From Octopus sinensis (Eukaryota): a stretch of DNA of 64,000 bases. The notes beneath the pieces were generated by a model. That model did not search any database and was not told where the DNA came from. It saw only the letters and a program-made list of their open reading frames with translations. The stretch is from NCBI RefSeq assembly GCF_006345805.1, contig NC_043016.1, forward strand, positions 28,520,001-28,584,000, read 5' to 3'. Both the position numbers and the translations under genes were made by a program. Below, piece after piece: positions 2,610 through 62,038 of this stretch; position 1 is the first letter of the stretch, and each line of letters begins with the position of its first letter.

Positions 2610-2732
2610 CATATATATATATATACACATACATATATATATATATATATAAATCATCTGTTCAAAGATTTTATTCACCTAGTTACAGTGGAATACATCG
2701 GTCAGTAGTGACACCTGCTGGTTCTGGCTACG

Positions 2733-2772
2733 CTGCATTGATAAAGGGCAACACACTGAAACATGTCTGCAG
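2733..2772 (+). ncRNA. Minimal type I hammerhead motif, U3-A8 variant (copy 1, one stem II mismatch)
   Basis: CTGCA-TTGATAA-AGGG-CAACA-CACT-GAAAC-AT-GTC-TGCAG. Confidence 0.6.
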
Positions 2773-3091
2773 ATGTCTGACTAGCAAGGTGAAGCGGCTG
2801 ACCTCCCCTGTTCGAAGGTTGTAATGGATGCAGGTTTGTGTGTCAAATAGCTAGCTAGAGGCGGTGGCCTCTTGGAGCTAATCAGCGACAGCTTTAGTCT
2901 TATTTATAGACTGCCATATTAGTATGGCGATAACTATTAATACCCAGTAACGCTGCCGTAATCTCCTTTAGAGAGACTTAGTAATTTTAATATTTCTATT
3001 ATTGAAAACAAGTGGATGTATTCCACTGTAACTAGGTAAATAAAATCTTCGAACAGATGCTCAGTAGCAACACCTGCTGGTTCTGGCTACG

Positions 3092-3500: not shown

Positions 3501-4089
3501 TATGTCAAAACATGTTTCTCCAGTGTTAGCCACCTCACCTTATCATGGCTTAACAGCCCTTACTGTTTTTACTGTCCTGTTTTTGTTACCAACTTTAACC
3601 CTCTGCAAATACCAAATTTTATTTAATTTGCTTTGCAGGAGTAACTGTTTTTGACAAAAGCACATCTTGTCGTAAATGCTCAAAATGTGGAGTAGATAAA
3701 ACAGCCGACAACTGATGGAGGGTTGTTCTTTATGTTGCTTGTCTTGTTTTCCATTTGTTCCTTTCATTGTTTGCAAAAGAGTTCATATTCCATGTTTTTG
3801 TATATCATGTTGTTTACGTTCAATGATGTCCTGCACCCATATATGCATGTGTATATATATATATATATGTAAGTATCTACGTATATGTATTTATACATGC
3901 ATATATATATATATGTGTGTGTGTGTACATATATATGCATATATATATATATACATGCATATATATCTATATCTATATATATATATATATATATTCAACA
4001 ATTGAGGGTAAAATTAATTAATTAATTAATCAATTTCACCAAGTATTCAGTATGCAAAGGGACCATTTAAGGCAAATTCAAATTATTAC

Positions 4090-4278
4090 ATTATATAAAA
4101 GGGCTTAGTAAATAAATTACTTTGCCGCATACTGAACTCGTTAGAAATAGCAGCTAAAAAAACTATTTCTATCACTTAAAGAAAAGAGGTTTTCTTTAAG
4201 TGTTAGAAATAGTTTTTTTAGCTGCTATTTCTAACGAGTTCAGTATGTGGCAAAGTAATTTATTTTACTAAGCCCTTT

Positions 4279-4286
<8 letters not shown>
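4090..4286. repeat. Near-perfect fold-back palindrome, about 96-bp arms, 4-nt loop
   Basis: Left arm 4090-4185 is the reverse complement of 4190-4286 with two substitutions and one indel; loop GAGG. Confidence 0.92.
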
Positions 4287-4310
<24 letters not shown>

Positions 4311-11779: not shown

Positions 11780-12725
11780 TGTATATTAAACATGGGGACT
11801 TGCTGAGATGTCTAACCTAAAGTGAGGAAACCTTGCTAGTTGCAGTTATAGATGAAGGCATATTGAAAGTGAAAGCAAGAAAAACAACAAGAAAGCAAAA
11901 TGTACAGGAAGGGCATGAAGGAGCATTACTCAACAAGGGATTACATAATTCTGTGTAACCATAACTGAAGTTGCTGGAGAATATAGATTGGACTGTTTAA
12001 AGAGAGGGACACTTAAAAAGAGACTGAGAGTGTCATACTTGCAGTTCAAGACCAAGCTTTGGTTACATATTGGAGGGTCAACCTTAGAAGGAAGCAAGTG
12101 TTTCCATTGTGCTGATTTTGACAAAATCACTGCTCATATTGTAAAGGAATACTCTAGACTTACCCAAAACCAATATAAGTTGTAGCAATGTGATGAGGAA
12201 GGATAAGGGCAGCATTGGAAACTATGTGAAAAGTCAGGGTTATTCAGAGGCAAGGCATGGTACAAACACAAACCACAGAGAGCAGTTGAGTAAGAAACTT
12301 GCAAAATCCTGTGGGATTTCCCACTCCGAACAGACGAGGTGCTTGAGCACAAGCCAGACTTAGTGTACTCTATAACTGATGTTGCATACCCATTTGACCC
12401 ACAAATAATTAAGAAGGAAGGTGAAATAATGTATACAATACTCTTGAATATGAGAGAGCCTGACTGTGGAAGATGAAAAAGGTGAAGATAATGTCAAATT
12501 ATTGTTGGGGCCTTGGGAAGAGTATTAAAAGATATCAAGAAGAATATAAAATAAATAGGAAAATAGTACCAGGTAGAGCTCTTGCAAAACGTTTGCCTCC
12601 TCCGCACAGCCAGAATCATCAGGAAAGTATTAGATATTCGAAAAGAATAAATAGCATAGTACTAGCAAGCCCACTCCTCATGCAAGATCCCAGGAGTTCC
12701 AAGAAAAGCTTGAGTTAAAAGAATA
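11780..12725 (+). mobile_element. Older Dong/R4-clade LINE remnant
   Basis: Decayed zinc-knuckle and restriction-like endonuclease segments (ILWDFPLRTD...HKPDLV...DVAYPFD); followed by (TAC)n(TAA)n(GAA)n(CAA)n. Confidence 0.65.
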
Positions 12726-12856
12726 CTACTACTACTACTACTACTAATAATAATAATAATAATAATAAAAAGAAGAAGAAGAAGAAGAACAACAACAACA
12801 AGTGGATCACAGATACATTCTAGAAGATTTTAAAAAATTATCCTGCATTGAAATAG

Positions 12857-12920
12857 TTGTTCAGTTGTATAACATTTTGTTTCTATAAAATTGTTCAGTT
12901 GTATAACATTTTGTTTCTAT
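12857..12920 (+). repeat. 30-bp direct duplication (34-bp period)
   Basis: ttgttcagttgtataacattttgtttctat at 12857-12886 and 12891-12920. Confidence 0.95.
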
Positions 12921-13017
12921 GAAAACTGGATAAGAAGAAAAGCTTCAATTCTTGAGACACTATAGAGCTTCCTGGTGACTCAATGGGTTATAGGTAGTCT
13001 AGTCTAGTCTAGTCTAG

Positions 13018-13018
<1 letters not shown>
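12920..13018 (+). repeat. Left inverted arm (75 nt unique plus (TAGTC)4 TAGT)
   Basis: Exact reverse complement of 16039-16137. Confidence 0.97.
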
Positions 13019-13052
<34 letters not shown>

Positions 13053-13059
13053 TATATAC

Positions 13060-16000
13060 ACTAGACTAGACTAGACTAGACTAGACTAGACTAGACTAGA
13101 CTAGACTAGACTAGACTGACTGGACTGGACTGGACTGGGACTGGACTGGGACTGGACTGGACTGGACTGGACTGGACTGGACTGGCTGGACTGGACTGGA
13201 CTGGACTGGACTGGACTGGACTGGACTGGACTGGACTGGACTGGACTGGACTGGACTGGACTGGACTGGACTGGACTGGACTGGACTGGACTGGACTGGA
13301 CTGGACTGGACTGGACTGGACTGGACTGGACTGGACTGGACTGGACTGGACTGGACTGGACTGGACTGGACTGGACTGGACTGGACTGGACTGGACTGGA
13401 CTGGACTGGACTGGACTGGACTGGACTGACTGGACTGGACTGGACTGGACTGGACTGGACTGGACTGGACTGGACTGGACTGGACTGGACTGGACTGGAC
13501 TGGACTGGACTGGACTGGACTGGACTGGACTGGACTGGACTGGACTGGACTGGACTGGACTGGACTGGACTGGACTGGACTGGACTGGACTGGACTGGAC
13601 TGGACTGGACTGGACTGGACTGGACTGGACTGGACTGGACTGGACTGACTGGACTGGACTGGACTGGACTGGACTGGCTGGACTGGACTGGACTGGACTG
13701 GACTGGACTGGACTGGACTGGACTGGACTGGACTGGACTGACTGGACTGGACTGGACTGGACTGGACTGGACTGGACTGGACTGGACTGGACTGGACTGG
13801 GACTGGACTGGACTGGACTGGACTGGACTGGACTGGACTGGACTGGACTGGACTGGACTGGACTGGACTGGACTGGACTGGACTGGACTGGACTGGACTG
13901 GACTGGACTGGACTGGACTGGACTGGACTGGACTGGACTGGACTGGACTGGACTGGACTAGACTGGACTAGGACTAGACTAGACTAGACTAGACTAGACT
14001 AGACTAGACTAGACTAGACTAGACTAGACTAGACTAGACTAGACTAGACTAGACTAGACTAGACTAGACTAGACTAGACTAGACTAGACTAGACTAGACT
14101 AGACTAGACTAGACTAGACTAGACTAGACTAGACTAGACTAGACTAGACTAGACTAGACTAGACTAGACTAGACTAGACTAGACTAGACTAGACTAGACT
14201 AGACTAGACTAGACTAGACTAGACTAGACTAGACTAGACTAGACTAGACTAGACTAGACTAGACTAGACTAGACTAGACTAGACTAGACTAGACTAGACT
14301 AGACTAGACTAGACTAGACTAGACTAGACTAGACTAGACTAGACTAGACTAGACTAGACTAGACTAGACTAGACTAGACTAGACTAGACTAGACTAGACT
14401 AGACTAGACTAGACTAGACTAGACTAGACTAGACTAGACTAGACTAGACTAGACTAGACTAGACTAGACTAGACTAGACTAGACTAGACTAGACTAGACT
14501 AGACTAGACTAGACTAGACTAGACTAGACTAGACTAGACTAGACTAGACTAGACTAGACTAGACTAGACTAGACTAGACTAGACTAGACTAGACTAGACT
14601 AGACTAGACTAGACTAGACTAGACTAGACTAGACTAGACTAGACTAGACTAGACTAGACTAGACTAACTAGACTAGACTAGACTAGACTAGACTAGACTA
14701 GACTAGACTAGACTAGACTAGACTAGACTAGACTAGACTAGACTAGACTAGACTAGACTAGACTAGACTAGACTAGACTAGACTAGACTAGACTAGACTA
14801 GACTAGACTAGACTAGACTAGACTAGACTAGACTAGACAGACTAGACTAGACTAGACTAGACTAGACTAGACTAGACTAGACTAGACTAGACTAGACTAG
14901 ACTAGACTAGACTAGACTAGACTAGACTAGACTAGACTAGACTAGACTAGACTAGACTAGACTAGACTAGACTAGACTAGACTAGACTAGACTAGACTAG
15001 ACTAGACTAGACTAGACTAGACTAGACTAGACTAGACTAGACTAGACTAGACTAGACTAGACTAGACTAGACTAGACTAGACTAGACTAGACTAGACTAG
15101 ACTAGACTAGACTAGACTAGACTAGACTAGACTAGACTAGACTAGACTAGACTAGACTAGACTAGACTAGACTAGACTAGACTAGACTAGACTAGACTAG
15201 ACTAGACTAGACTAGACTAGACTAGACTAGACTAGACTAGACTAGACTAGACTAGACTAGACTAGACTAGACTAGACTAGACTAGACTAGACTAGACTAG
15301 ACTAGACTAGACTAGACTAGACTAGACTAGACTAGACTAGACTAGACTAGACTAGACTAGACTAGACTAGACTAGACTAGACTAGACTAGACTAGACTAG
15401 ACTAGACTAGACTAGACTAGACTAGACTAGACTAGACTAGACTAGACTAGACTAGACTAGACTAGACTAGACTAGACTAGACTAGACTAGACTAGACTAG
15501 ACTAGACTAGACTAGACTAGACTAGACTAGACTAGACTAGACTAGACTAGACTAGACTAGACTAGACTAGACTAGACTAGACTAGACTAGACTAGACTAG
15601 ACTAGACTAGACTAGACTAGACTAGACTAGACTAGACTAGACTAGACTAGACTAGACTAGACTAGACTAGACTAGACTAGACTAGACTAGACTAGACTAG
15701 ACTAGACTAGACTAGACTAGACTAGACTAGACTAGACTAGACTAGACTAGACTAGACTAGACTAGACTAGACTAGACTAGACTAGACTAGACTAGACTAG
15801 ACTAGACTAGACTAGACTAGACTAGACTAGACTAGACTAGACTAGACTAGACTAGACTAGACTAGACTAGACTAGACTAGACTAGACTAGACTAGACTAG
15901 ACTAGACTAGACTAGACTAGACTAGACTAACTAGACTAGACTAGACTAGACTAGACTAGACTAGACTAGACTAGACTGACTAGACTAGACTAGACTAGAC

Positions 16001-16062
16001 TAGACTAGACTAGACTAGACTAGACTAGACTAGACTAGACTAGACTAGACTAGACTAGACTA
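13060..16062 (+). repeat. Pentanucleotide satellite, about 600 units: (GACTA)n-(GACTG)n-(GACTA)n
   Basis: GACTA 13060-13114, GACTG about 13115-13955, GACTA about 13956-16062; rare single-base indels and ACTAA variants. Confidence 0.99.
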
Positions 16063-16137
16063 CCTATAACCCATTGAGTCACCAGGAAGCTCTATAGTGT
16101 CTCAAGAATTGAAGCTTTTCTTCTTATCCAGTTTTCA
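16039..16137 (-). repeat. Right inverted arm
   Basis: Unique part 16063-16137 is the exact reverse complement of 12920-12994. Confidence 0.97.
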
Positions 16138-16339
16138 CTTAGCTTGGTCATGTAATTCAGATGAGTAAGGAACACACAACCAATGTCTCTCCTACATAAC
16201 CAACTTTATTATAAGACATGAAATGAGTGAAACTTAAGATACAAAGATGAACAGCATAAATGTAAAAGAAAACATATTTGACATAAAGCATTATACATAA
16301 GTGTTGTAGAGTGAAGTGAATTGAATAAATTCTTGCTTG

Positions 16340-16780
16340 CTTCTTGCTTCGTGCTTTTGCTTGATGGGGCTGGAGTCACCTCAGGTTAGTGGCCTCATAG
16401 ATGTCATCATATGTAGAGGTGGCCAGGTCCACCAGTGCTTTTCATTGCTGGTGGTCCCATGCCAGTTCCTCTGCATCCTCCAAGATGATGTTGAGCCTCT
16501 GGAGATCTTCCTTAACCACGTCCAGCCATCTGGTGTGGAGCCTATTTCAAGGCCTCTTCCAGCTTGTAGCTACTGTGTCAAATGAGAGTAAAGCCCTGGT
16601 AGGATGATCTAGTGGGAAACAGAGGACATGTCTACACTAGTTCGTGTGATGGATAGCTATGAGGTGGGAGGGTGCAGATTGATGCATAAACACATGCAAT
16701 TCTTTGTTGAAAGCATGATGGTACCATCTGGTGCTTTTCAAGATAGAGCAGTGGTACCAGAGGGCTTCTATAGGGAGTAA
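16340..16780 (-). mobile_element. LINE 3' remnant (RTE-like)
   Basis: Minus frame WLDVVKEDLQRLNIILEDAEELAWDHQQWKALV, typical of RTE-group ORF C-termini. Confidence 0.65.
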
Positions 16781-16899
16781 GTAATGCATTTTAAAAAATA
16801 AAGTTATACACGTGTATTTGTACTTTCAAAGTAAAATGTGTTTTTTTTTTATCAGAAATAAGGCTACTTGATCAAAACTCAGGATGAACAGTGTAGAAT

Positions 16900-17900
16900 A
16901 ATAATAATAATAATGAAATTATTATATACAGTGCTCAGGTGCACCACAACTTGTCAGAAAGTGCATATAAAGTACATGCAGTAATGTAAAAATGTCTGGA
17001 AAGCGAACAATGTATGAGTCAGATACATGCTTGTGTGTGTAAGGAGGGGAGAAAATCGGGTGTAGTGTTAGTGAATCTCAGAAAGCATGGAAGTTTTCAA
17101 GGATGCAGTGCTCTGACAACTAACAACTGATGCCGGCAGTTTGTTCCATGCTTCAGCAATTCTTAGCATGAAAAAATGTTTCCTGAAGTCATGGAGCTGT
17201 GCTGTTTTCTGACTTTGTAATATGTCCACGGGTGTTAGATGGGTGGAGTTTTGAAAAGGTGCTCAGAGTTATTGTTTGTACGATGGTTGATAATTTTATG
17301 GGTGTCTGCCAAGTCAGCTGCCAGACGTCGAGTTTCAATGTGTCCATGCCCAGGGAAGTTCAGGATATGGCAAATGCCTGATGGAGGGTATTCTTTTGGT
17401 TGCACATCGCTGAACAGCTTCCAGACGATTGATATCCTGGGCAAGATAGGGGTTCCAGACCGGTGATGCAAATTCCAAGTGAGGTCTTACCATAGCTATA
17501 TAAAGCCGCCGATAGATAGCCAGAGAGCGGCTCACAAAGGATTTGGTGAGTGATGCCAAGACACCCTCAGCCTTCTTGACAATTTTAGCGATGTGTTTTG
17601 TCCAATGCAAATCACTGTCAACAATAACACCCAGGTCATGTTCACATGTAGACTTTTTGAGACTAGTGTTGTGGAGGAGTAGGTGGACGCTGGGTTTCTC
17701 CTCCCAAATGCATGGTGGTACATTTGTCCACAGCCAGCTTGAGTTGCCAGTCCATGATCCACTGCTGCATTGTGTCCAGGTCTGCTTGCAATAGAGATCT
17801 ATAGTGTACAGGATTTGACCTCTTTATTTCGAGGTACAGCTTGATGTCATCTGCATATTTCAGCACTGTGGCATTCTTTAAGTTGGCATCTATGTCATTA
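16900..17900 (-). mobile_element. CR1/L2-like LINE, RT C-terminal half and 3' end
   Basis: KYADDIKLY RT motif, WQLKLAVDKC, LYIAMVRPHLEFASPVWNPYL...LEAVQRCATK; (ATT)n tail; frameshifted. Confidence 0.9.
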
Positions 17901-18089
17901 ACATATGCAACATATAAAAAACAAGGAATTCATAGATACTTGCTACCCAATCGCTTCAAAATGCACCTGCAAATATATACTGTGCTGTTCAATTACAACA
18001 AAGTCACCAATGTAGAAAATAAGGATGTTCAGAGATAATTTAATTATAATAGATTGCTTTTTGTTTTCTACATACCACCAGTATGAAGA

Positions 18090-25593: not shown

Positions 25594-25639
<46 letters not shown>

Positions 25640-25640
<1 letters not shown>

Positions 25641-25910
25641 CCGATTACCGGCAGGAACTTCTGTAAAGTTCAGTATATATATTGTATATAAGAAAAAGGG
25701 ACAGGCAGTATTCGTTATCTATTCCTTCTGTTTTGCATGTGTGAATTACAGGGTCTGTCATGCCCGGAGTCCAACTTTGATAGAAATAAGCATTCTTGAC
25801 TGCTATTTCTATTTTTTCGGTATGCGGTCAAGCAACCTGTTTTGCCTGTCCCTTTTTCTTATATACAATATATATACTGAACTTTACAGAAGTTCCTGCC
25901 GGTAATCGGC
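25640..25910. mobile_element. MITE with perfect 68-bp TIRs, TA-flanked
   Basis: 25640-25707 is the exact reverse complement of 25843-25910; 135-bp spacer; TA on both sides. Confidence 0.88.
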
Positions 25911-26100
25911 TATATTTACATACCGAATTCTACCAGTAAATAATTGGGGTTTTTTTAAAAGCCTTTATAGAAATTATTTACTCTTATTATTATATATATA
26001 TATATATGCATATACATAAATATATATATACACACATATGTGTATATATATACATATATGTATATATATATATGTATATATACATATATATATACACATG

Positions 26101-26133
<33 letters not shown>

Positions 26134-26519
26134 TAATAATAAATATTAGGGAATAAATCCAAACTTACAGGGAAAAATTAACAGCCATGAAACGATCGTA
26201 GTGATATATCAAATATAGTTTTTTAATAATTTTGTTATATATTTAAATAATATAAATTAAATAATCTTATGTATTGGCTTAAGTTTTTCATTGTATGATT
26301 TGCCTAATAGTGGTTTTGTCTCTAATTTAATATAATATATATATATATATATATATACACATGTATATAAATATATATATAGATATATATACATACATAT
26401 ATACACACATGTATGTATATATATATATATACATATATATGGAAAGCGGAAACTAAACGATGATGATGATGATGATGATGATATATACATGTATGTATAT
26501 ATACATGTATTTATATATA

Positions 26520-27340
26520 TATCGTCTTCGAAGCCTTTGACGAAATAGAAGGGGATATAGCTTCATATGGTGTAGAAGACAACTGGAGGTTCCTATGGGA
26601 CAACCTGCTAAGGACCACCGACCAGATCTGTGGATGGTGCAAAGTCCCCTCTCAACCCAAAATAATGAGGTGGTGATACAATGTGGTTGACAGGGCTATT
26701 AGACAAAAGAAACAGGCTTGGAAGGACTGGAAGAATGGTGGTAGCAGGGAAGTGTATCAGACTGCCAGAAGGGAAGCTAGGAGGCAGGTTTATTTAGCCA
26801 GATGGGAAGCAGATGGGAAAAAATTGGTCAATGTTCTGTACCGTGAGGACCAAAAACTTGAGGTATTTCGTGTTGCAAGACAGTGTGAGAGAGAATTGTG
26901 ATGTTGTAGGAGAGAAATGTGTTCGCATGGATGATGTTTCTCTTGCACTAAACAAGGCTGCAAAGAGAGAGGTTTGGAGACGCCACTATGAAAGGTTGCT
27001 CAATAAAGAAAATGAATGGGAGAAAGAGAGTCTGCTGAATGTCGACTCAACAGAGGAACCAGCTATCCGAGTTGACAGTACCTTGGTAGATAAAGCAATT
27101 AAAAGTATGAAGACAGGGAAAGCCCTCAGCCCATCAGGAATTACTGCAGAGATGCTTAAAATATCTGGTAGTGTTGGCTATAGCATAGTCACCCGTATAG
27201 TTAACCAGGTGATACATGAAGGAGTCATACATAATGACTTATGTAGCAGCATAATAGTCAACTGCTACAAAAGTAAAGGTGATGCTTTCAATACAAATAA
27301 TTACAGAGGTATCAAGCTGTTGGATCAGGTAATGAAGGTT
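26520..27340 (+). mobile_element. RTE LINE internal fragment (endonuclease-RT linker to start of RT)
   Basis: ...IKSMKTGKALSPSGITAEMLKISG...NNYRGIKLLDQVMKV; homologous to the reverse complement of 29240-30060. Confidence 0.93.
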
Positions 27341-27344
27341 ATGT

Positions 27345-30225
27345 CTAACATCTGCTTTCCATGCTAGCATGGGTTGGATGATTTGACTCAAGACTGGCAA
27401 ACCAGATGGCTGCATCAGGCTCTAATCTTGATCTGGCAGAGTTTCTACAGCTGGAGATGCCCTTCCTAACACCAACCACTCCGAGAGTGTAGTGAGTGCT
27501 TTTATGTGCCCCTGACACGAGGGAAGTACTGGCAATGGTTACATTCAAATGGAGTTTTTTACATGCCACCTGCACAGGAGCCAGTCCAGCAGCACTGGCA
27601 ATGACTTTACTTGAATGTCTTTTCACATGCCACCAGCGCAGGTGCCAGTAAGGCGACGCAGGCAACGATCATGCTCGAATAGTGCTTTTTATGTGCCACT
27701 GGCACAGAAGCTAGTTTGCTGCTCTGACAACGATCACGCTCTGATGTGTTCTTAGCACTCCACTAGCATGGATGCCAGTCATCGAATTTGATTTCACTTG
27801 CCTCAACAGGTCTTTGCAAGCAGAGTTTCATGTCCAATGAAGGAAAGGTACTCATTATATAAGTGGGCTGGTTACATCCCTGGCATAGGCCACGAGGTTA
27901 TGGTCTCACTTGGTTTGCTGGGTTTTCTCAAGCACAGCATATTTCCAAGTCTCGGTCACTAGTCATTGCCTTGGTGAGGCCTAATGTTCGAAGGTCATGC
28001 TTCACCACTTTATCCCAGGTCTTCCTCTTCCACAGGTTCCCTCAAACTGCTAGAGTATGGTACTTTTTCACACAGTTCATCCATTCTCACCACATGCCCT
28101 TACCAGCGCAATCATCTCTCTTGCACATCACATCTGATGCTGCTTAGGTCCAACTTCTCTCTCAAGGTACTTACACACTGTCATGTATGCACACGGACAT
28201 TACACATCCATTGGAGCATACTGGCTTCATTCCTTGTGAGCTTACGCATGTCCTTGGCAGTCATGGCCCATGTTTCACTGCCACATAGCATGGCTGTTCA
28301 TACACATGCATCATACAGTCTGCCTTTTATTCTGAGCGAGAGGCCTTTTGTCACCAGCAGAGGTAAGAGCTCTCTGAACTTAGCCCAGGCTATTCTTATT
28401 CTAGCAGCTACACTTTCAGCACACCCTCCCCCGCTACTGACTTGGTCACCTAGGTAATGGAAGCTATCAACTACTTCTAGTTTTTCTCCTTGGAATGTGG
28501 CGGAAGTTGTTCTCTGCACATTTTCAGTGTTAATTGCTCCTGAGCATCTGCCACATACAAAAACTATCTTCCCAGTTTGCCTTCCTTTGATATTGCTGTA
28601 CCTCTTATGTGTCCATAGCTTTCACTGGGTACATCTTATGGAGTTTCTACCAACGCCTTTTCTACAGATCAAGCTGGGCCATCTACCTGAAGGGATTTGT
28701 GGTTTGCCTGCCTTCCTACCTATTAGGACTTTGGTTTTAGCTAGGTTGACTCTTAGGACCTTCTATTCTAATCCTTGTTTCCACACCTGAAACTTCTCCT
28801 CTAGTTCTGATAGTGACTCAGCAATTAGAGCAAGGTCGTCAGCATAGAGAAGCTCCCAGGGGCATCCTGTCTTGAATTCCTTTTTTATTGCCTGGAGGAC
28901 TATGATAAATAAGAGGGGGCTGTGGACTGAACCTTGGTGGAACCCTACTTCTACCCAGAATTCTTCATTGTACTTGTTGCCAACCCTCACCTTACTGACG
29001 GTGTCCCTGTACATGGCTTGCACATCTCTCACTAACCATTCATCTATCCCTAGTTTCCTCATTGACCACCAGATGTCAACGAAAGCTAGGTACAGAGGTT
29101 TATCTTTGGCTAGGTATTTCTCCTGCAACTGTCTTACCAGAAATATAGCATCAGTGGTGCTTTTTCCTGGCACGAACCCAAACTGCATCTCATCTAAACT
29201 GACTCCCTCCTTAATTACTTGGGCTATGACCCTCTCCGTAACCTTCATTACCTAATCCAACAACTTGATACCTCTGTAATTATTTGTATCTAAAGTGTCA
29301 CCTTTAACTTTTTAGCAGTTGACTATAGTGCTGCTACACCAGTCATTGGGTATGACACCTTCGTGTATCACCTGGTTAACTATATGGGTGACTAGGCTAT
29401 AGCTGACACTGCCAGATATTTTAAGCATCTCTGCAGTAATTCCTGATGGACTGGAGGCTTTCCTTGTCTTCATAATCTTAATTGCTTTATCTACCAAGGT
29501 ATTGTCAACTCGGATAGCTGGTTCCTCTGTTGGTTTGACATTCGACAGACTCTCTATCTCCTATTCATTTTCTTTATTGAGCAACCTTTTATAGCAACCT
29601 TTTATAGTGGCGTCTCCAGACCTCTCTCTTTGCAGCCTTGTTTAGTGCAAGAGAAACATGCGAACACATTTCTCTCCTACAGCATCACAATTCTCTCTCA
29701 CACACTGTCTTGCAACACGAAATACCTAAAGTCTTTGGTCCTCACAGTACAGAACATTAGCAAACTTCTTCTTATCTACTTCCCCTCTGGCTAAAATAAA
29801 CTTGTCTCCTAGCTTCCCTTCTGGCAGTCTGATACAATTCCCTGCCACCACTGTTCTTCCAAGCCTGTTTCTTTTCTCTAATAGTCCTGTCAACAACATT
29901 GTTCCACCACCACGTTATTTTGGGTTGAGAGGGGACTTTGCACCAACCACAGATCTGGTCGGTGGCCCTCAACAGGTTGTCCTGTAGAAACCTCCAGTTG
30001 TCTTCTACATCGTGTGAAGCTATATCCCCTTCTATTTCGTCAAAGGCTTTGAGTAATAAGTCTCTAAATCTCTGTCCATTCACAAGATCTTTAAGCTTCC
30101 AGACCCTTCTCCTCCATGCTAGTCATCCACTTAGCCCTGATCCTGAAGTCACTAACTACCAGTCTATGTTGTGGGGTACATTCTTCGCCTGGGAAGGTTT
30201 TGGCATTTATAAGCAGCCATCTTTC
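27345..30225 (-). pseudogene. RTE LINE, about 2.9 kb decayed copy (endonuclease end, full RT, 3' UTR)
   Basis: GEECTPQHRLVVSDF, MQFGFVPGKSTTDAIFLVRQLQEK, ELLYADDLAL, FHYLG, RIAWAKFRELLPLL; multiple frameshifts. Confidence 0.95.
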
Positions 30226-38919: not shown

Positions 38920-40335
38920 AAAACCTCAGTTTCACCAAGATGGGCAGGTTTTCTTGAATATTGCATATTGCCAGTCATATTGGTTATTTATCTCCTCCAT
39001 AAAGTTTAAGATCCTGAGACCAGCCTTCATCACTTTGTGCCATGTCCTTCTGGATCTTCCTCTTCCAGAAGTTCTATTTTCATTAAGTCATTGGCACTTC
39101 TTCATACAACTGTCCTCATTTGTGTTCATGACATGTCAGTACCAGCACAGTCTTTTTTCTCGCATGCTACATTTAATTCCTCTTATTCCCAGTTTTTCTC
39201 ACTGCACATTTGCACACTTACATTTCACAACAAAACATCCTTGTTTTATTTCTTTCCCTTCCTTTTAAGGCCTATGTCTCACTACCCTGCAGTATTGCAA
39301 TTCTAACACAGGCATCAATCATTCTGTCTACTTTTCACACTGTGGGAAAAGACCTTTGTTACCAGTAGTGGAAGCGGTTTCTTCTGGCTACTACTATAGT
39401 TTTGAAGCCACCACCTCTCCTGCTTATTACATTTCTTGGGTATCACACTTTTAGTAAGTCATCCAGGCATCTAAGGGAGTCTACTTCTGGTGGGCTCATT
39501 GTGTATATTGTTCCAGTGCATCTGTCATATATGAAGTTCCCTGACATTCCATTATATTTCCTCTGTGTCCATAGTTTACATTGGGTAGAACATATAGAGT
39601 TTATACATAGTGCTTTTCTACATATTGAGCAAGGACATTTCCTTGAAGATATCAGGGTTGTGTCTTTCCTACTTACTAAAAACTTAGTCTTTGTTAAGTT
39701 TACTTTACAACCTGTTGACTCAAGGGTTAGTTTCCATGCTTAGAATTTCCTCTCTAATTTTCCTGCAGATCCAACTTTGTGAACCAGATCATCATCATTA
39801 TCATTTAACGTCCGCTTTCCATGCTAGCATGGGTTGGACGGTTCAACTGGGGTCTGGGGAGCCCGAAGGCTGCACCAGGCCAGTCAGATCTGGCAGTGTT
39901 TCTACAGCTGGATGCCCTTCCTAACGCCAACCACTCCGAGAGTGTAGTGGGTGATTTTATGTGTCACCGACACAGGTGCCAGACGAGGCTGGCGAACGGC
40001 CACGCTCGGATGGTGTTTTTTATGTGCCACCGACACAGGTGCCAGACGAGGCTGGCAGACGGCCACGCTCGGATGGTGTTTTTTATGTGCCACCGACACA
40101 GGTGCCAGACGAGGCTGGCAGACGGCCACGCTCGGATGGTGTTTTTTATGTGCCACCGACACAGGTGCCAGACGAGGCTGGCAAACGGCCACGATCGGAT
40201 GGTGTTTGTTACGTGCCCACAGCACGGAGGCCAGTCGATGCGGTACTGGCTACGGCCACGTTCGGATGGTTTTCTTGTGTGCCACCGGCACTGGTACCAC
40301 AAAGATACAAATTCCATTGATGTTCATCTATTTTG
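38920..40335 (-). mobile_element. RTE LINE remnants (RT piece and a separate 3' UTR)
   Basis: 38920-39770 is homologous to 27930-28790; 39790-40335 is a (GAT)n-tailed 3' UTR. Confidence 0.85.
39958..40290. repeat. 60-bp tandem repeat inside the RTE 3' UTR (4 near-identical units plus diverged ones)
   Basis: Unit tgtgccaccgacacaggtgccagacgaggctggcagacggccacgctcggatggtgtttttta. Confidence 0.95.
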
Positions 40336-52511: not shown

Positions 52512-54420
52512 AGAAAGTAAAAGTAGGAAAAATTACATCATAAAAATAACAGTAGAAATACTTCCATAATATAAATAATATTGTATTAATAAATAAATAT
52601 ATAAAGTATAACTATGGTTATTTAAAATGTTTTGAGATATCTTATGATCATTTCATGAATGTATAACCTTTTGAAATCAAATCCAAAATTGATAATTATT
52701 ATTAGGTAGTATATCCACTCATCAGAGAAATGGATGAATTTCTATGTAGTTAATTGACTGATAGAGATGCTATTTAAAATCGTATGATAAAGGTGTTGTT
52801 TAAAAAGTTATTGGTATAGATGTGCATTGGTATAAACTTGGGCTAGAAATTTTGTAAAAATAATATAAATCCATGGTAAAATCCTTTGTAATAATCCTTA
52901 ATAGTTGTGTGTAGATTGAAGTCCCATAATTCCTTTTCTCTTCAGTTTGTAATCCGTAAGTGTAAAGAATAAAAATGGTGAATTGTTGCTTTTATAGTTA
53001 TATATACAAAACGGAAGATACCATTATTATATTTTATGCAAATGTAAAAATAGCCGTGTACTGACCCAATATAGAGTAAATCAATGTGTTATATTTAAAA
53101 TCAGTATGTTATGTATTAGAAGTGTATAGGTTCAATTTTCAAGAAGACAAATTTCAGGCACTCATCTAATGGATAATCTGTATTATGTGAACATGTGTAT
53201 AATCTAAACATAGTTCAATTTTAAGTTTCTATTCCTTACTTATAACAATCCTAGTGTTTAAAAGTTTTATAAAACCTATGTCTACATGTAGATAATGCTT
53301 CCAATTGGCAATTAATTAAATTATTTTGTTTATATAATATGTATAGTGATTCTTTTGTACATAGATGACAAATAGAAGATTTATGGGTATATGGTGTAGC
53401 TGAGTCAATAATTGACCAGAATAATTTATAGTTGAGGTTTTTTTGTTTGTGTTTATGTACAGATGTAGCCAATGAAGTAGGTTCAAATGAATGTATATGT
53501 GCTAAAAATCTTTGTTTAAAATTAATAGAGCTCCTGATATATACCTTACTGTGTGAGTTAGCAGATTTAGTAACAGTACACTTATATATAATGTTGAACC
53601 TTCTACATTGCCTTCTGAAGGACATGATTTAGAAAAAATTTACATATGCAATATTTGGTTGTATGTTTCTGTTCCATGGTATTATGATTATTTGTTATGT
53701 TGTGTGGTGTTAGATTTGAATTTGTTGTGGAATAATTTATAATAGAATTAGGTAAATTTACTGTTTGCATATTACTATTGTTATTAGATTGTCGTATTGG
53801 ATTATCTAAAGTCCTGTCATATCCAATGGTTTGTATATTTTGAGATATATAATTATTGGAATTTTGTTGAGATTTAGTTAATTGTATTGCTATGTATTCT
53901 CGTAATGTTATCTATTGAACTGGTATTATATTGAGTATCATTTGGTGTTCTGGGACTATTGTGTATTTCATTACTAGTATTATAGTTGTTAGTATTATTT
54001 CATAAACTATATTTACATTAAGTTTTTGTCTATTAGAGCTGGCGATAATTGAACCTATGTTCGGCAATGTAGAAAAAGATATTTTAATTGTTGATCTATT
54101 AAACATATGGTGATACTTATGATTATTAGGAAAACAATTTTTGACTACGTTTAGAAAACGTTTGCTAATCCATTAACATTTATTGAAAATGGGGGTGTGT
54201 GCCAAATAATTTCCCTATTTCCACTCCTACTAGGTAATTTATTATAGTTATAGACTATTTTTGGAATTTGTATGGTATTTCCCGAGTGTTTTTTGTTATT
54301 TTTATATTTGGTTCTATGTGTACTATAGCATTTTCTAGTTTTTTTTTGTCATGTCTTACAGAGGTTTGATCTTTTTGTATTGATTGAATATTATTGTTAG
54401 AGATAAGGTTAGTTGTATGT
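52512..54420 (-). mobile_element. Penelope-like element (RT end, GIY-YIG endonuclease, 3' UTR)
   Basis: FNRSTIKISFSTLPNIGSII; NIIYKCTV...VYI...FKQRFLAH...WSIIDSATPY...CHLCTKESLYIL...STCRHR. Confidence 0.9.
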
Positions 54421-55762
54421 AGTGATATATGACAGTTTAAATAAAGGACTCTGCAATGAGATAAACACTTGGGAAAATGCAATAATAGTTAATATGGCAG
54501 ATTATACTGGGATACCATGGCGTTATAACCCTGTGCTGGCAAACTGGGATCAAACATCAAAAATAGTTAACTACAATAAAGATTTTGAAAGCTGAGAGAT
54601 GACAATGGACACCAGTCAGGTACCAAAGTATATAAACTATTGTGATCTCCAAGATGTTTTCAATATTGACATTCTACAGAAAGATGTAATTTGATTGCAT
54701 TTAAAGTTGTATTAACAGGATAAATGAAGTCGCTCGGAGGTGGGGGCCGAAAGACTTCATTCATCTTTCCACTTTCATTCGTTTTTTTTTTTTGTCCCCC
54801 ATGTTTTGAGTTGTCCCCTCTATGTCTGCCCCTTGTGGATAATAAAGAAATCAGTACATGGCTATTTTTACATTTGCATAAAATATAATGTTAAGGATGG
54901 CATATGAAAATATCAGACACTCCAGAGCTTGCATCTTCCAAGGAGGAACTACTGGAGTTTGTGAATGTAATGAAAGAGAAGAAAAGAAATTTTGCGGCAG
55001 TGGCCAAGAGCCACAGCAACGAAATTGAATTATTGGAACTAAACAAATATAAGAACATGCGTTGCAGGGAGGGGTGCGGTGTAAAGGTGTCTCCTCCCCA
55101 AGAAGTTTTAAAAGCAACCAAGGAGAGAACTATCATAAACAGGACATACTCTGTAAAAACAAAGAAAATAGTAATTATGTTGACTGTGCAAGTCGCAAAA
55201 GCTTTAAAACCAATCTGACAAGGAATTTCTTACTTTGCCAGAGAAAGGAAGTTTGGAATGGTGAAGGTGTGGTTCCGTGAGATAGCTGCCTGGCTATACT
55301 TAGCAACACCCTTAAAGATGGAAAAAGCAGTACTTCTGCCCATATACCTTGGGAGGCATGCATCCAGGGTTAGGGTAGAAGATATACCCACTGAGATCGA
55401 TGTAGCCTGGCTAGTAGCTGCCGTACTGCTGGGTAACGAAGAAAAGATAGTGGTCCTCCAAGCCATAAGAACAGCACACAAGAACTGGCAAGGGCAGAGC
55501 TTGGTCATGATAATCCAGGTGGTCCCGAAAGACCTCGAAAGCATAAAAGAGACCATCACCATAGAAGATGTGACACTCAGGGTCAGAATGGATGGCAGGA
55601 CACCGTGATGCTACGGACTGTCCTCCACTGCTCTTAATGACCAAAGGAAAACCTGCAAGATTTCATTTTTATCCATTATTTTATTCATCTCTTACATTTG
55701 TTTTTTGTTCCCACCTTGTATTGTCCCCTCTATGTTGATTCTTTGTGGGTAATAAAGAAAAC
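54420..55762 (+). mobile_element. LINE-derived composite: 3' end with stem-loop, ORF1/gag-like remnant, second 3' tail
   Basis: ORFs 54904-55218 and 55258-55608 end in ...VRMDGRTP*CYG (zinc-knuckle-like onset); tail ttgtcccctctatgt..cttgtgg..aataaagaaa at 54811-54850 and 55721-55760; 9-bp stem aatgaagtc/gacttcatt at 54723-54761. Confidence 0.6.
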
Positions 55763-55782
55763 TTTATTCTTATGAATTACAT

Positions 55783-56203
55783 ACTGAAGAGAAAAGGAAT
55801 TATGGGACTTCTATCTACACACAGCTATTAAGGATTTTACCATGGATTTATATTATTTTTTTCAAAATTTTAAATTCAAGTTTATACCAATGCACACCTA
55901 TACCAATAGCTTTTTAAACAATACCTTTATCATACGATTTTAAATTGCATCTCTATCAGTCAATTGACTGCATAGAAATCCATCCATTTCTCTGATGAGT
56001 GGTTATACTACCTAATAATAATTATCAATTTTGGATTTCCTTTCAAAAGGCAATGCATTCATGAAACAATCGTAAGATATCTCAAACCATTTTAAACAAT
56101 CAGTTATACTTTATATATTTATTTACTAATACAATATTATTTATATTATGGACATATTTCTACTGTTATTTTTATGATGTAATTTTTCCTACTTTTACTT
56201 TCT
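55783..56203 (+). repeat. Inverted copy of the Penelope 3' UTR (52512-52946)
   Basis: Reverse-complement match over about 420 bp, roughly 90% identical by eye. Confidence 0.92.
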
Positions 56204-56471: not shown

Positions 56472-56939
56472 CGAGCCCTTATCTGAAATCTAGTACACAT
56501 TATTCTTAAAGGATATATTTGATTAACTATATATATATATATCTCATAGGTTGCCATGTATGTATGTTCACTATATAAAGACACATGTACTTGTTCCTCA
56601 ATCATAATTTAATTCCCCATCACCTGGCATAAGGCCACTTCTCCCCACTCTCAAATATTCCCCTCACTTAGCTGGTGGGATAGTTATTTTCATTTTTTAA
56701 ATTTTATCTTCCTTGTTATTTTCTTGTCTTGTAAGTTACTTGGCAATTTCACTTGTGTTACTGGCATGAAAATATATTCAGTACACTCTATAAAGCATCA
56801 GAGAAGAGCATCCAGCTGCAGAAATCATGTTGAAGCTGACACTGGAGCAAGACACAGCTTTACGGCTCACTGGATCCTGTCAATCCATACAACTCATGCC
56901 AACATGGAAAATGGATGCTAACTGATAACAATGATGATT

Positions 56940-56971
<32 letters not shown>

Positions 56972-56974
<3 letters not shown>

Positions 56975-57330
56975 TCATCATCATCATCGTTTAGCGTCCG
57001 TTTTCCATGCTAGCATGGGTTGGACGGTTCTACTGGGGTCTGTGAAGCCAGAAGGGTTCATCAGCCCAGTCAAATCTGGCAGTGTTTCTACGGCTGGATG
57101 CCCTTCCTAACGCCAACCACTCCGTGAGTGTAGTGGGTGCTTTTTACGTGCCACCCGCACAGGTGCCAGACAGAGCTGGCAAATGGCCACGAACGGATGG
57201 TGCTTTTTACGTGCCACCGGCACAAGGCCAGTCGGGGCGGCGCTGGCAACGGTTGCGAAACGGAAGGTTCTCTTACATGCCACCGGCACTGGTAACACAT
57301 CTGCAATTTCCATTGATCGATTTCGATTCA
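56972..57330 (-). mobile_element. RTE LINE 3' UTR
   Basis: Near-identical to 19425-19800. Confidence 0.92.
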
Positions 57331-57352
57331 TATATATATATATATATATAAT

Positions 57353-61041: not shown

Positions 61042-61307
61042 AGAAAAATTAGCTGATCAACCTTGAGTGAAGAAGATAGAGACTACACATTTGATTTTTG
61101 TGTGTGTATGTGTCAAGCAAAGCTACACACAACGACACTAGATATATCACATCACCCTGCATATTTCTATGTTGTTGGTGTTGAAATAAGCAGGGTGATG
61201 TGATATATCTTGTTCGTTGTGTGTAGCTTTGCTTGACACATACACACATAAAAATCAAATGTGTAGTCTCTATCTTCTTCACTCAAGGTTGATCAGCTAA
61301 TTTTTCT
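61042..61307. repeat. Fold-back palindrome, about 125-bp arms, 15-nt loop
   Basis: 61042-61167 versus 61183-61307 differ at about four positions. Confidence 0.93.
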
Positions 61308-61563: not shown

Positions 61564-61677
61564 TAGTTGCAATTAATTTTGTCTCTAAAGTAAAACTTTT
61601 ATACATATATATACACATACATATGTGTATATATATGTATAAAAGTTTTACTTTAGAGACAAAATTAATTGCAACTA
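61564..61677. repeat. Perfect palindrome, 56-bp arms, 2-nt loop
   Basis: 61564-61619 is the exact reverse complement of 61622-61677. Confidence 0.93.
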
Positions 61678-61938: not shown

Positions 61939-62038
61939 NNNNNNNNNNNNNNNNNNNNNNNNNNNNNNNNNNNNNNNNNNNNNNNNNNNNNNNNNNNNNN
62001 NNNNNNNNNNNNNNNNNNNNNNNNNNNNNNNNNNNNNN
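61939..62038. other. Assembly gap (100 N)
   Basis: Run of N. Confidence 1.

What the first reader, a model, noticed from the sequence alone, without database searches (positions are those of the whole stretch)
12920..16137. 3.2-kb asymmetric fold-back: identical inverted arms, (AT)n axis and one arm inflated by about 600 pentamers
Seen: U(75 nt)-(TAGTC)4-(AT)about 20-(GACTA/GACTG)about 600-U'(75 nt). U and U' are exact reverse complements and the pentamer flips orientation across the (AT)n run. Collapsing the array to four units gives a perfect palindrome of about 240 bp. There is no target-site duplication (flanks ...gtttcta and cttagc...). Known: mollusc satellites often sit inside MITE or Helentron-like elements, and fold-back elements have repeat-containing inverted termini. 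Inference: either a satellite born by runaway expansion of one arm of a cruciform-forming palindrome, or a template-switch inversion seeded at the self-complementary (AT)n; an assembly U-turn at (AT)n is also possible.
Basis: partly seen in the sequence, partly recalled or inferred. Interest (0 to 1): 0.82.

Follow-up and report, generated by a model that had tools for sequence, protein, structure and literature searches.

The report
Lopsided palindrome with expanded pentamer repeat
A short DNA palindrome centred on a (TA)n run has had the 5-base repeat in one arm grow to about 3 kb; the structure is real in the sequence, but it is an unusual example of known repeat behaviour and not a new kind of element.

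Summary
U (12920-12994) and U' (16063-16137) are exact reverse complements. Perfect pairing runs 99 nt and stops dead at both outer ends. A 41-nt (TA)n axis and about 600 pentamers lie between the arms. Collapsed, the locus is a 239-nt palindrome, 236/240 self-complementary.

New details:
- The array has three blocks: GACTA x10, GACTG about x170, GACTA about x419.
- All 14 imperfections are 1-nt indels, which look like long-read consensus errors.
- GACTA/TAGTC is itself a CTAG-based hairpin-former; GACTG is not.
- A 34/35-bp tandem duplication straddles the left junction.
- There is no target-site duplication of 2-12 bp.
- U' is not the end of the neighbouring RTE-like LINE.

The same 64 kb holds five other near-perfect short inverted repeats, and a SINE pair lying tail-to-tail across a (TA)15.

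Core reading (about 0.85): a real, young palindrome whose right-arm microsatellite expanded in place. How the palindrome arose is unresolved:
- local fold-back or template-switch copying at the (TA)n, about 0.35
- insertion of a MITE-like element, about 0.25
- two retroposon tails, about 0.2
- assembly artefact, about 0.07

The host genome could not be searched, so the decisive copy census of U is still to be done. Interest is moderate to low.

The parts
12857..12925 (+). 34/35-bp tandem duplication (12857-12890 and 12891-12925). The second copy runs 6 nt into U (TGAAAA against TAAAA in the first copy). It marks the left junction.
   Evidence: TRF period 34, 2.0 copies, 97%; self-BLAST 97.1% over 35; read directly.
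12920..12994 (+). U, the left unique arm (75 nt).
   Evidence: Exact reverse complement of 16063-16137. No other copy in the window.
12995..13018 (+). (TAGTC)4 + TAGT, the short left pentamer run, still inside the perfect 99-nt pairing.
13019..13059 (.). (TA)n axis, 41 nt, with one phase break (AA at 13045/13046) and a C at 13059 where symmetry predicts T.
   Evidence: The local hairpin 12900-13130 folds at -43.9 kcal/mol, z -9.2.
13060..13113 (+). Axis-proximal (GACTA) x about 10, the mirror image of the left run.
13114..13965 (+). (GACTG) x about 170, the motif-switch block (A to G destroys the CTAG palindrome). It carries 9 single-base indels.
   Evidence: (GACTG)20 and (CAGTC)20 show no fold.
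13966..16062 (+). (GACTA) x about 419, the main block, with 4-5 single-base indels.
   Evidence: (GACTA)20 folds at -24.2 kcal/mol, z -8.1.
16063..16137 (-). U', the right unique arm (75 nt).
16138..16332 (.). 195 nt of unassigned AT-rich sequence between U' and the nearest recognisable element. This is context: if U' were a retroposon end, its body would lie here.
   Evidence: No match elsewhere in the window. Homology of the related LINE copies stops at 16333.
16333..16741 (-). 5'-truncated RTE-like LINE fragment. ORF2 C-terminus at 16376-16630 with two in-frame stops, then an (AAGCA)-like tail ending near 16333. It is context, not part of the fold-back.
   Evidence: 71 homologues. Homologue P0008 carries RVT_1. 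Logan contigs align at 73-78% from 16741 down to 16333 only.

Best explanation
Core claim, about 0.85. The locus is a real, young hairpin-type palindrome, U-(TAGTC)n-(TA)n-(GACTA)n-U', about 240 bp when formed. The right-arm pentanucleotide microsatellite later grew in place by replication slippage or unequal sister exchange. Growth came in at least two bursts: one unit mutated from GACTA to GACTG and that variant expanded to about 170 units, while the GACTA tract next to U' grew to about 419 units. The left run stayed at 4.8 units, at or below the usual slippage threshold.

Origin of the palindrome, inferred, about 0.35-0.4. It arose on the spot. The self-complementary (TA)n folded back, either as a hairpin on a nascent strand at a stalled fork or as a cruciform-derived hairpin end opened off-centre. 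DNA synthesis then copied the adjacent (then short) pentamer run plus 75 nt of neighbouring sequence in reverse complement. Synthesis rejoined the left flank at 12919/12920. The 34/35-bp direct duplication at that junction may be a second switch in the same event.

Shown: the anatomy, the perfect arms, the missing target-site duplication, and the self-pairing of the GACTA motif. Inferred: the order of events and the local origin.
For: - The arms are 99/99 identical and end sharply. Dispersed repeat copies in the same window are at most about 94% alike.
- The inner junctions are mirror images in the same pentamer phase, differing by one substitution. The original duplication therefore ran through the (TA)n and the pentamers as one piece.
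- No target-site duplication of 2-12 bp.
- U occurs only in this pair in the window.
- A direct 34/35-bp duplication sits exactly on the new junction and includes 6 nt of U.
- Template-switch events are reported to create perfect inverted repeats, sometimes together with direct repeats, and to be enriched in AT-rich DNA (PMC7954356).
- AT/TA repeats form cruciforms that are cut by structure-selective nucleases (PMC12972899).
- The axis hairpin is very stable, -43.9 kcal/mol, z -9.2.
- Each block of the array is essentially pure, since all 14 flaws are 1-nt indels. That fits recent growth in place.
Against: - No outgroup or second individual could be examined, so the ancestral state (one arm or two) is unknown.
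- The copy number of U in the genome is unknown.
- Reported short-range template switches are usually tens of nucleotides (my recollection), and about 100 nt is long for one.
- The window contains other near-perfect palindromes, at least one a clear transposon-like element with TA|TA flanks. Perfect arms are therefore not special to local events here.
- The 34/35-bp duplication could be a contig-join or polishing artefact at a repeat boundary and not biology.
- The GACTG block does not self-pair, so hairpin formation by the repeat cannot explain all of the growth.
Confidence: 0.37

Rival explanations
1. MITE-like or fold-back-type non-autonomous DNA transposon. U and U' are its terminal inverted repeats, the interior is only microsatellites, and the whole palindrome was inserted here. 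One internal microsatellite then expanded.
For: - Perfect long terminal inverted repeats.
- The same 64 kb holds five other short near-perfect inverted repeats. One has 73/73-nt arms flanked by TA|TA at the edge of a (TA)n tract. Another is a 114-nt palindrome with a TA/CA-rich centre and no unique interior.
- A detailed Octopus vulgaris repeat annotation lists thousands of recently active TIR-element insertions, mostly Tc1-Mariner (PMC13282606). That the window is from an octopus-like genome is my inference only.
- Arms of unequal length built of tandem repeats are the hallmark of Drosophila FB elements (my knowledge).
Against: - No target-site duplication of 2-12 bp. The left flank ends in TA but the right flank starts with CT, with a TA only 2 nt further on.
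- The termini TG...CA match no superfamily motif that I know.
- There is no second copy of U in the window.
Confidence: 0.25
2. Two retroposon (LINE/SINE) 3' ends lying tail-to-tail. U-(TAGTC)n-(TA)n would be the 3' end plus compound microsatellite tail of a retroposon family. The right copy lies on the minus strand. The left copy is a second insertion, 5'-truncated to 75 nt and primed in the self-complementary (TA)n. The right tail then expanded.
For: - The window's abundant SINE-like repeat ends in (GAT)n followed by (TA)n in at least 7 of 12 copies.
- At 56890-57021 two such copies lie tail-to-tail across one (TA)15, the left one short.
- At about 26440-26480 a copy truncated to about 20 nt plus its tail sits inside TA repeats.
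- Every recognisable LINE end near the locus carries a 3-6-nt repeat tail.
- RTE elements leave many truncated 3' ends flanking microsatellites, reverse-transcription slippage lengthens them, and opposite-orientation double insertions are described (PMC2887409).
Against: - Arms are 99/99 identical here, against 80% over 49 nt in the SINE pair.
- U' is not the end of the adjacent RTE-like LINE, because family homology stops at 16333.
- The 195 nt next to U' has no relatives in the window.
- No Rfam LINE 3' element, tRNA-like part or significant fold was found in U.
- No (TA)n or other duplication flanks either putative 5' end.
- The pentamer occurs nowhere else in 64 kb.
Confidence: 0.2
3. Assembly artefact: a fold-back or chimeric long read, or a misjoin at the (TA)n, created the left arm. 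The array length may also be wrong.
For: - All 14 array flaws are 1-nt indels, typical of noisy long-read consensus.
- The 34/35-bp duplication with a 1-nt difference at the U boundary looks like an untrimmed overlap from a contig join or gap fill.
- The window contains a 100-N scaffold gap, so it comes from a scaffolded assembly.
Against: - A missed-adapter or fold-back read would give the reverse complement of the right flank to the left of U. Instead the inverted repeat stops after 75 unique nt and unrelated sequence follows.
- The second copy of the duplication carries 29 nt of true left flank joined to U, so that junction exists in whatever molecule supplied it.
- The two inner junctions differ by a substitution, which a simple strand copy would not produce.
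Confidence: 0.07

Closest known systems
Foldback (FB) elements of Drosophila (my knowledge, not tested here)
   Same: Long inverted termini with a unique outer part and tandem repeats inside; the two arms often differ in length because repeat numbers differ; little or no unique interior.
   Different: FB elements make 9-bp target-site duplications and have 10/20/31-bp repeat units. Here there is no duplication, the unit is 5 bp, the asymmetry is 4.8 against about 600 units, and no other copies are known.
Palindromic MITEs with long perfect inverted repeats, for example the element at 25635-25915 of this window
   Same: Near-perfect arms of 56-99 nt, TA-rich surroundings, small size once collapsed (239 nt).
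   Different: The comparator has TA|TA flanks and 135 nt of unique interior. The finding has no target-site duplication and an interior made only of microsatellites.
Short-range template-switch mutations and hairpin-end inverted duplications (PMC7954356; PMC12972899; PMC7999016)
   Same: One event creates a perfect inverted repeat next to a self-complementary AT-rich seed; no target-site duplication; may come with direct repeats at the junction.
   Different: The copied stretch is long (about 100 nt). The event itself is not shown, because there is no ancestral sequence to compare.
Microsatellites born from retroposon 3' tails (lepidopteran RTE, PMC2887409; L1/Alu tails, PMC3812793). Also human pentanucleotide expansions with motif switch inside Alu tails, such as RFC1, SCA37 and SCA31, which I cite from memory and did not test.
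   Same: A simple repeat directly abutting a short conserved 3' segment; kb-scale growth; a block of a derived motif (GACTG) embedded in the ancestral one (GACTA).
   Different: U could not be tied to any LINE or SINE, and the repeat is mirrored on the other side of a (TA)n.
Helentron/Helitron-borne satellites of bivalves
   Same: Tandem repeats carried inside a non-autonomous element in a mollusc genome.
   Different: The termini, insertion-site rule, 3' hairpin and monomer size (about 100-200 bp) all fail here.

Membership tests
MITE / non-autonomous TIR transposon | Terminal inverted repeats | tested here: met
   99/99 nt perfect, of which 75 nt are unique sequence.
MITE / non-autonomous TIR transposon | Target-site duplication directly flanking the inverted repeats | tested here: not met
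   No direct repeat of 2-12 bp, with the ends moved inward by 0-6 nt. Flanks are ...TTTCTA| and |CTTAGC...
MITE / non-autonomous TIR transposon | Many dispersed copies | tested here: inconclusive
   No other U in 64 kb. Exact U 22/24-mers gave 0 hits in JGI metagenome contigs and GTDB genomes, but those collections do not hold the host genome.
Foldback (FB)-type element | Inverted termini made of tandem repeats with unique outer ends and arms of unequal length | tested here: met
   U + (TAGTC)4.8 against U' + about 600 units.
Foldback (FB)-type element | 9-bp target-site duplication and a family of copies | tested here: not met
   No duplication. Copies could not be looked for in the source genome.
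Helitron/Helentron-borne satellite | 5'-TC...CTRR-3' ends with insertion between A and T (or T and T), and a 3' subterminal hairpin | tested here: not met
   Ends are TG...CA and flanks are A| and |C. U folds no better than shuffles, z -0.94.
Helitron/Helentron-borne satellite | Internal satellite monomers of about 100-200 bp | tested here: not met
   Period 5 only.
LINE/SINE 3' end with microsatellite tail | Unique 3' segment followed directly by a simple-repeat tail | tested here: met
   U then (TAGTC)n then (TA)n, read on either strand. The window's SINE-like repeat has the same layout.
LINE/SINE 3' end with microsatellite tail | Continuity of U with a recognisable LINE ORF2 end or SINE body | tested here: not met
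   Homology of the neighbouring RTE-like family ends at 16333, 195 nt from U'. No tRNA or Rfam match. No relatives of 16063-16900 in the window.
LINE/SINE 3' end with microsatellite tail | Other copies with variable 5' truncation and target-site duplications | not testable with these tools
   The host genome is not searchable. ORF-based look-ups around the locus returned nothing.
Template-switch / fold-back inverted duplication | Perfect inverted copy adjoining a self-complementary seed, with no target-site duplication | tested here: met
Template-switch / fold-back inverted duplication | Ancestral or orthologous sequence lacking one arm | not testable with these tools
   No sister-species or population sequence could be reached.
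Satellite DNA | Long arrays at many loci, or a sizeable share of the genome | tested here: inconclusive
   One 3.0-kb array. No other run of even two units in 64 kb. No literature hit for the motif as a repeat.

The most novel reading that the evidence does not exclude
The locus would be a caught-in-the-act example of a (TA)n tract seeding a fold-back duplication of single-copy DNA plus an adjacent microsatellite. The new palindrome then released a one-sided, kb-scale expansion with a motif switch, that is, the birth of a satellite-like array from a cruciform-forming site. Five other near-perfect palindromes lie in the same 64 kb, most touching TA-rich tracts. So this could be one instance of a frequent (TA)n-driven palindrome-making process in a TA-microsatellite-rich, octopus-like genome, with those palindromes not being transposon copies.
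Probability: 0.15. Interest if true: 0.6.

Novelty: new variant of a known kind. Interest (0 to 1): 0.35.

Why it matters
If the palindrome was made locally, the locus shows in one place how a self-complementary (TA)n can create an inverted duplication. It would also show how a CTAG-based pentamer can then grow 100-fold on one side only, with a motif switch like those seen in human pentanucleotide expansion loci. That would be useful as a natural example of satellite birth, and as a flag for a fragile, length-polymorphic site.

If it is a MITE or a pair of retroposon tails, it is routine repeat annotation, and the only notable point is the size of the expansion.

Either way the array length and the 34/35-bp junction duplication should be treated with caution in this assembly.

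Tried and rejected
1. U' as the 3' end of the adjacent RTE-like LINE with a (TAGTC)n tail: rejected. The fragment is a true LINE ORF2 C-terminus. Related Logan copies align only down to 16333, after an (AAGCA)-like tail.
2. Finding U elsewhere: no result. There were no exact hits in the metagenome or GTDB collections, and no other copy in the window even at word size 7 or by tblastx.
3. Fetching independent contigs of the locus through flanking ORFs: five exact look-ups and two protein searches returned nothing.
4. Literature search for the motif or the element: nothing relevant. The supplement of the Octopus vulgaris repeat paper holds no matching sequence.
5. Rfam: only sub-threshold matches of the AT-rich axis hairpin to AU-rich microRNA precursor models, all far below their gathering scores. 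I treat these as meaningless.
6. (TC)n(TA)n compound repeats as tails of another retroposon: rejected, because their upstream flanks are unrelated.
7. A general tendency of (TA)n tracts in the window to be flanked by inverted unique sequence: not seen in a gapless scan of 36 tracts. A k-mer scan then found five other palindromes.
8. Higher-order structure in the array: none found. The positions of the variants show no repeated pattern.
Full report
**1. Observation**

The structure is in the sequence as described. U (12920-12994) and U' (16063-16137) are exact reverse complements. Perfect pairing continues through four TAGTC units plus TAGT, giving 99 nt in all (12920-13018 against 16039-16137). 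It does not extend a single base outward. Two sub-patterns of U each occur exactly twice in the window, against 0 in 100 shuffles. Tandem Repeats Finder reports (TA)21 at 13018-13058 and a period-5 array at 13060-16062 with 601.8 copies and 98% matches. With the array collapsed to the 99-nt partner, the locus is a 239-nt palindrome that matches its own reverse complement at 236 of 240 aligned columns. The two asymmetries are a substitution at the pentamer/(TA)n junction and a one-base phase break in the (TA)n.

**2. New anatomy**

- The array has three blocks: GACTA x10 next to the axis, GACTG about x170 (13114-13965), and GACTA about x419 up to U'.
- All 14 irregular units (GACT, GACTGG, GACTGGCTG, GACTAACTA, GACA, GACTAG) are single-base deletions or insertions. 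No block contains a substitution. A real mutation spectrum would hardly look like this, whereas long-read consensus error would. The blocks are probably pure, and the exact length of the array is uncertain.
- GACTA/TAGTC is CTAG plus one spacer base, so each strand pairs with itself. (GACTA)20 folds at -24.2 kcal/mol and (TAGTC)20 at -19.2 kcal/mol, both with z about -8. (GACTG)20 and its complement do not fold at all. The 'flip' of the pentamer across the axis is therefore just a change of the spacer base, from CTAG-T to CTAG-A. Hairpin formation by the repeat cannot be the only driver of growth, because the non-pairing variant also reached about 170 units.
- The two inner junctions are mirror images in the same phase...TAGTC-TAGT-A-TATA on the left and ...TAGTC-TAGT-G-TATA on the right strand.
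- A 34/35-bp tandem duplication (12857-12890 and 12891-12925) lies on the left junction. Its second copy includes the first 6 nt of U, TGAAAA, where the first copy has TAAAA.
- No direct repeat of 2-12 bp flanks the element, even if its ends are moved inward by up to 6 nt.
- The pentamers occur nowhere else in the window.

**3. Surroundings**

The window is 36.5% G+C, rich in (TA)n, and packed with decayed retroelements. It looks like a cephalopod genome, perhaps an octopus. That is my recollection of the SINE-like repeat, and I did not verify it.

- **Right of U', minus strand.**
  - 195 nt have no relatives (16138-16332).
  - Next comes a 5'-truncated RTE-like LINE. Its ORF2 C-terminus lies at 16376-16630 and has two in-frame stops.
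  - The peptide has 71 homologues in the representative library. One of them, P0008, carries RVT_1.
  - Related copies on Logan contigs align at 73-78% DNA identity from 16741 down to 16333, and there they end in an (AAGCA)-like tail. U' is therefore not the 3' end of this LINE.
  - Further right lies a LINE fragment with RVT_1 at 17666-17929. It looks CR1-like, with an (ATT)n tail near 16900.
- **Left of U.** I read a LINE ORF2 end at about 12190-12718, followed by a compound trinucleotide tail at 12727-12801. The LINE assignment is my inference from motifs. Pfam found nothing there.

**4. Precedents inside the window**

Two ordinary processes already make inverted repeats in this window.

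- **Retroposon tails.**
  - The SINE-like repeat has 12 copies. It ends in (GAT)n, followed by (TA)n in at least 7 of them.
  - At 56890-57021 two copies lie tail-to-tail across a single (TA)15, the left one short and old. Their inverted arms match over 49 nt at 80%.
  - At about 26440-26480 a copy truncated to about 20 nt plus its tail sits inside TA repeats.
- **Palindromic elements.** A k-mer scan found five other short, near-perfect inverted repeats.
  - 25635-25707 against 25843-25915 has 73/73-nt arms, 135 nt of unique interior and TA|TA flanks at the end of a (TA)118 tract. This is a textbook MITE-like insertion.
  - 61042-61135 against 61214-61307 matches at 93/94.
  - 4110-4185 against 4190-4265 matches at 74/76.
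  - 61564-61619 against 61622-61677 matches at 56/56 and has a TA/CA-rich centre.
  - 2655-2699 against 3015-3059 matches at 43/45.
- **Comparison with dispersed copies.** Dispersed repeat copies in the window are at most about 94% alike. The U pair therefore groups with the palindromes and not with independent insertions.

**5. Explanations**

I am fairly confident (about 0.85) of the core reading: a real, young palindrome of about 240 bp, centred on (TA)n, whose right-arm microsatellite expanded in place. One A-to-G unit variant amplified as a block. How the palindrome arose is open.

- **(a) Local fold-back or template-switch copying at the (TA)n, about 0.35-0.4.**
  - It fits the perfect arms, the mirror-phase inner junctions, the missing target-site duplication, the absence of U elsewhere in the window, and a direct duplication exactly at the new junction.
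  - Template-switch events are reported to generate perfect inverted repeats, sometimes with direct repeats, in AT-rich DNA (PMC7954356).
  - AT/TA repeats form cruciforms that nucleases cut (PMC12972899).
  - It requires that the pentamer run was short (about 4-5 units) when the copy was made.
- **(b) MITE-like insertion, about 0.25.** It has the best precedent in the window, but it fails the target-site duplication test.
- **(c) Two retroposon tails, about 0.2.**
  - The same architecture exists at 56.9 kb. RTE-type elements are known to scatter truncated 3' ends with microsatellites, to lengthen them by slippage, and to occur in opposite orientations (PMC2887409).
  - However, the arms are identical, U could not be tied to any LINE or SINE, and neither putative 5' end has a flanking duplication.
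- **(d) Assembly artefact, about 0.07.**
  - A fold-back read would place the reverse complement of the right flank beside U, which is not what is seen.
  - The indel-only flaws and the junction duplication do warn that this stretch was hard to assemble.

**6. What could not be done**

- Exact U 22/24-mers gave no hits in JGI metagenome contigs or GTDB genomes.
- Five ORF look-ups and two protein searches around the locus returned nothing.
- The literature holds nothing on this motif.

The copy census of U, which would decide between (a), (b) and (c), therefore remains to be done.

**7. Verdict**

The locus is a variant of known kinds, namely fold-back or MITE-like palindromes and microsatellite expansion with a motif switch. 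Its notable features are the extreme one-sidedness (4.8 against about 600 units) and the perfectly preserved arms. Interest is about 0.35.

Noticed in passing
window 56890-57350: Two SINE-like repeat copies lie tail-to-tail across one (TA)15 (56942-56972): a diverged short copy (+) ...(GAT)2TTG, then (ATC)5 and a full copy (-). Their inverted arms match over 49 nt at 80%. The full copy also has (AT)10 at its 5' end (57330-57350), which suggests insertion into TA repeats.
   Followed up: partly
window 25635-25915: MITE-like element of 281 bp with perfect 73-nt terminal inverted repeats (GCCGATTACCGGCAGG...), 135 nt of unique interior and TA|TA flanks, sitting at the end of a (TA)118 tract.
   Followed up: partly
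window 61042-61307 and 61564-61677: Two further hairpin palindromes 250 bp apart. One is 267 nt, with 93/94 outer arms and a nested 28-nt inner pair. The other is 114 nt, with 56/56 arms, a 2-nt loop and a TA/CA-rich centre. No other copies of either occur in the window.
   Followed up: partly
window 4087-4289 and 2655-3059: A palindrome of about 200 nt (74/76 core arms, 4-nt loop) abuts a (TA)37 tract. A 45-nt inverted pair (43/45) starts right after an (AT)80 tract, and each of its arms is followed by the same direct repeat (..CAGTAG..ACACCTGCTGGTTCTGGCTACGCTGCATTGA).
   Followed up: no
window 52512-56203: Large inverted-repeat structure with arms of about 440 nt at roughly 94-97% (for example 52512-52613 against 56102-56203, 99/102). 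It encloses about 3 kb, including an ORF (53251-53625, minus strand) that looks GIY-YIG-like to me. Pfam found nothing. It may be a Penelope-like or long-TIR element.
   Followed up: partly
window 26531-27341 and 29239-30049: Inverted arms of about 800 nt at about 90%, flanking a reverse-transcriptase ORF (28763-29248, RVT_1). This is two retroelement copies in opposite orientation or one large palindromic duplication.
   Followed up: no
window 36645, 41686, 50284, 52328 (and 19-67): Compound (TC)n(TA)n microsatellites recur in the same orientation, but their upstream flanks are unrelated. They are not tails of one retroposon family.
   Followed up: yes
window 39955-40299: A 63-bp unit repeated 5.4 times (88% matches) inside a SINE-like repeat. 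It gives long repeat-derived reading frames on both strands.
   Followed up: no
window 61939-62038: A run of exactly 100 N, a scaffold gap of unknown size. The window therefore comes from a scaffolded assembly.
   Followed up: no
L001-L006 (Logan contigs from runs SRR11869384-394): Contigs from one series of public sequencing runs carry copies of the same RTE-like LINE family (73-78% DNA identity to 16333-16741) and other repeats of the window. The runs are probably from a related mollusc. The organism was not identified.
   Followed up: partly
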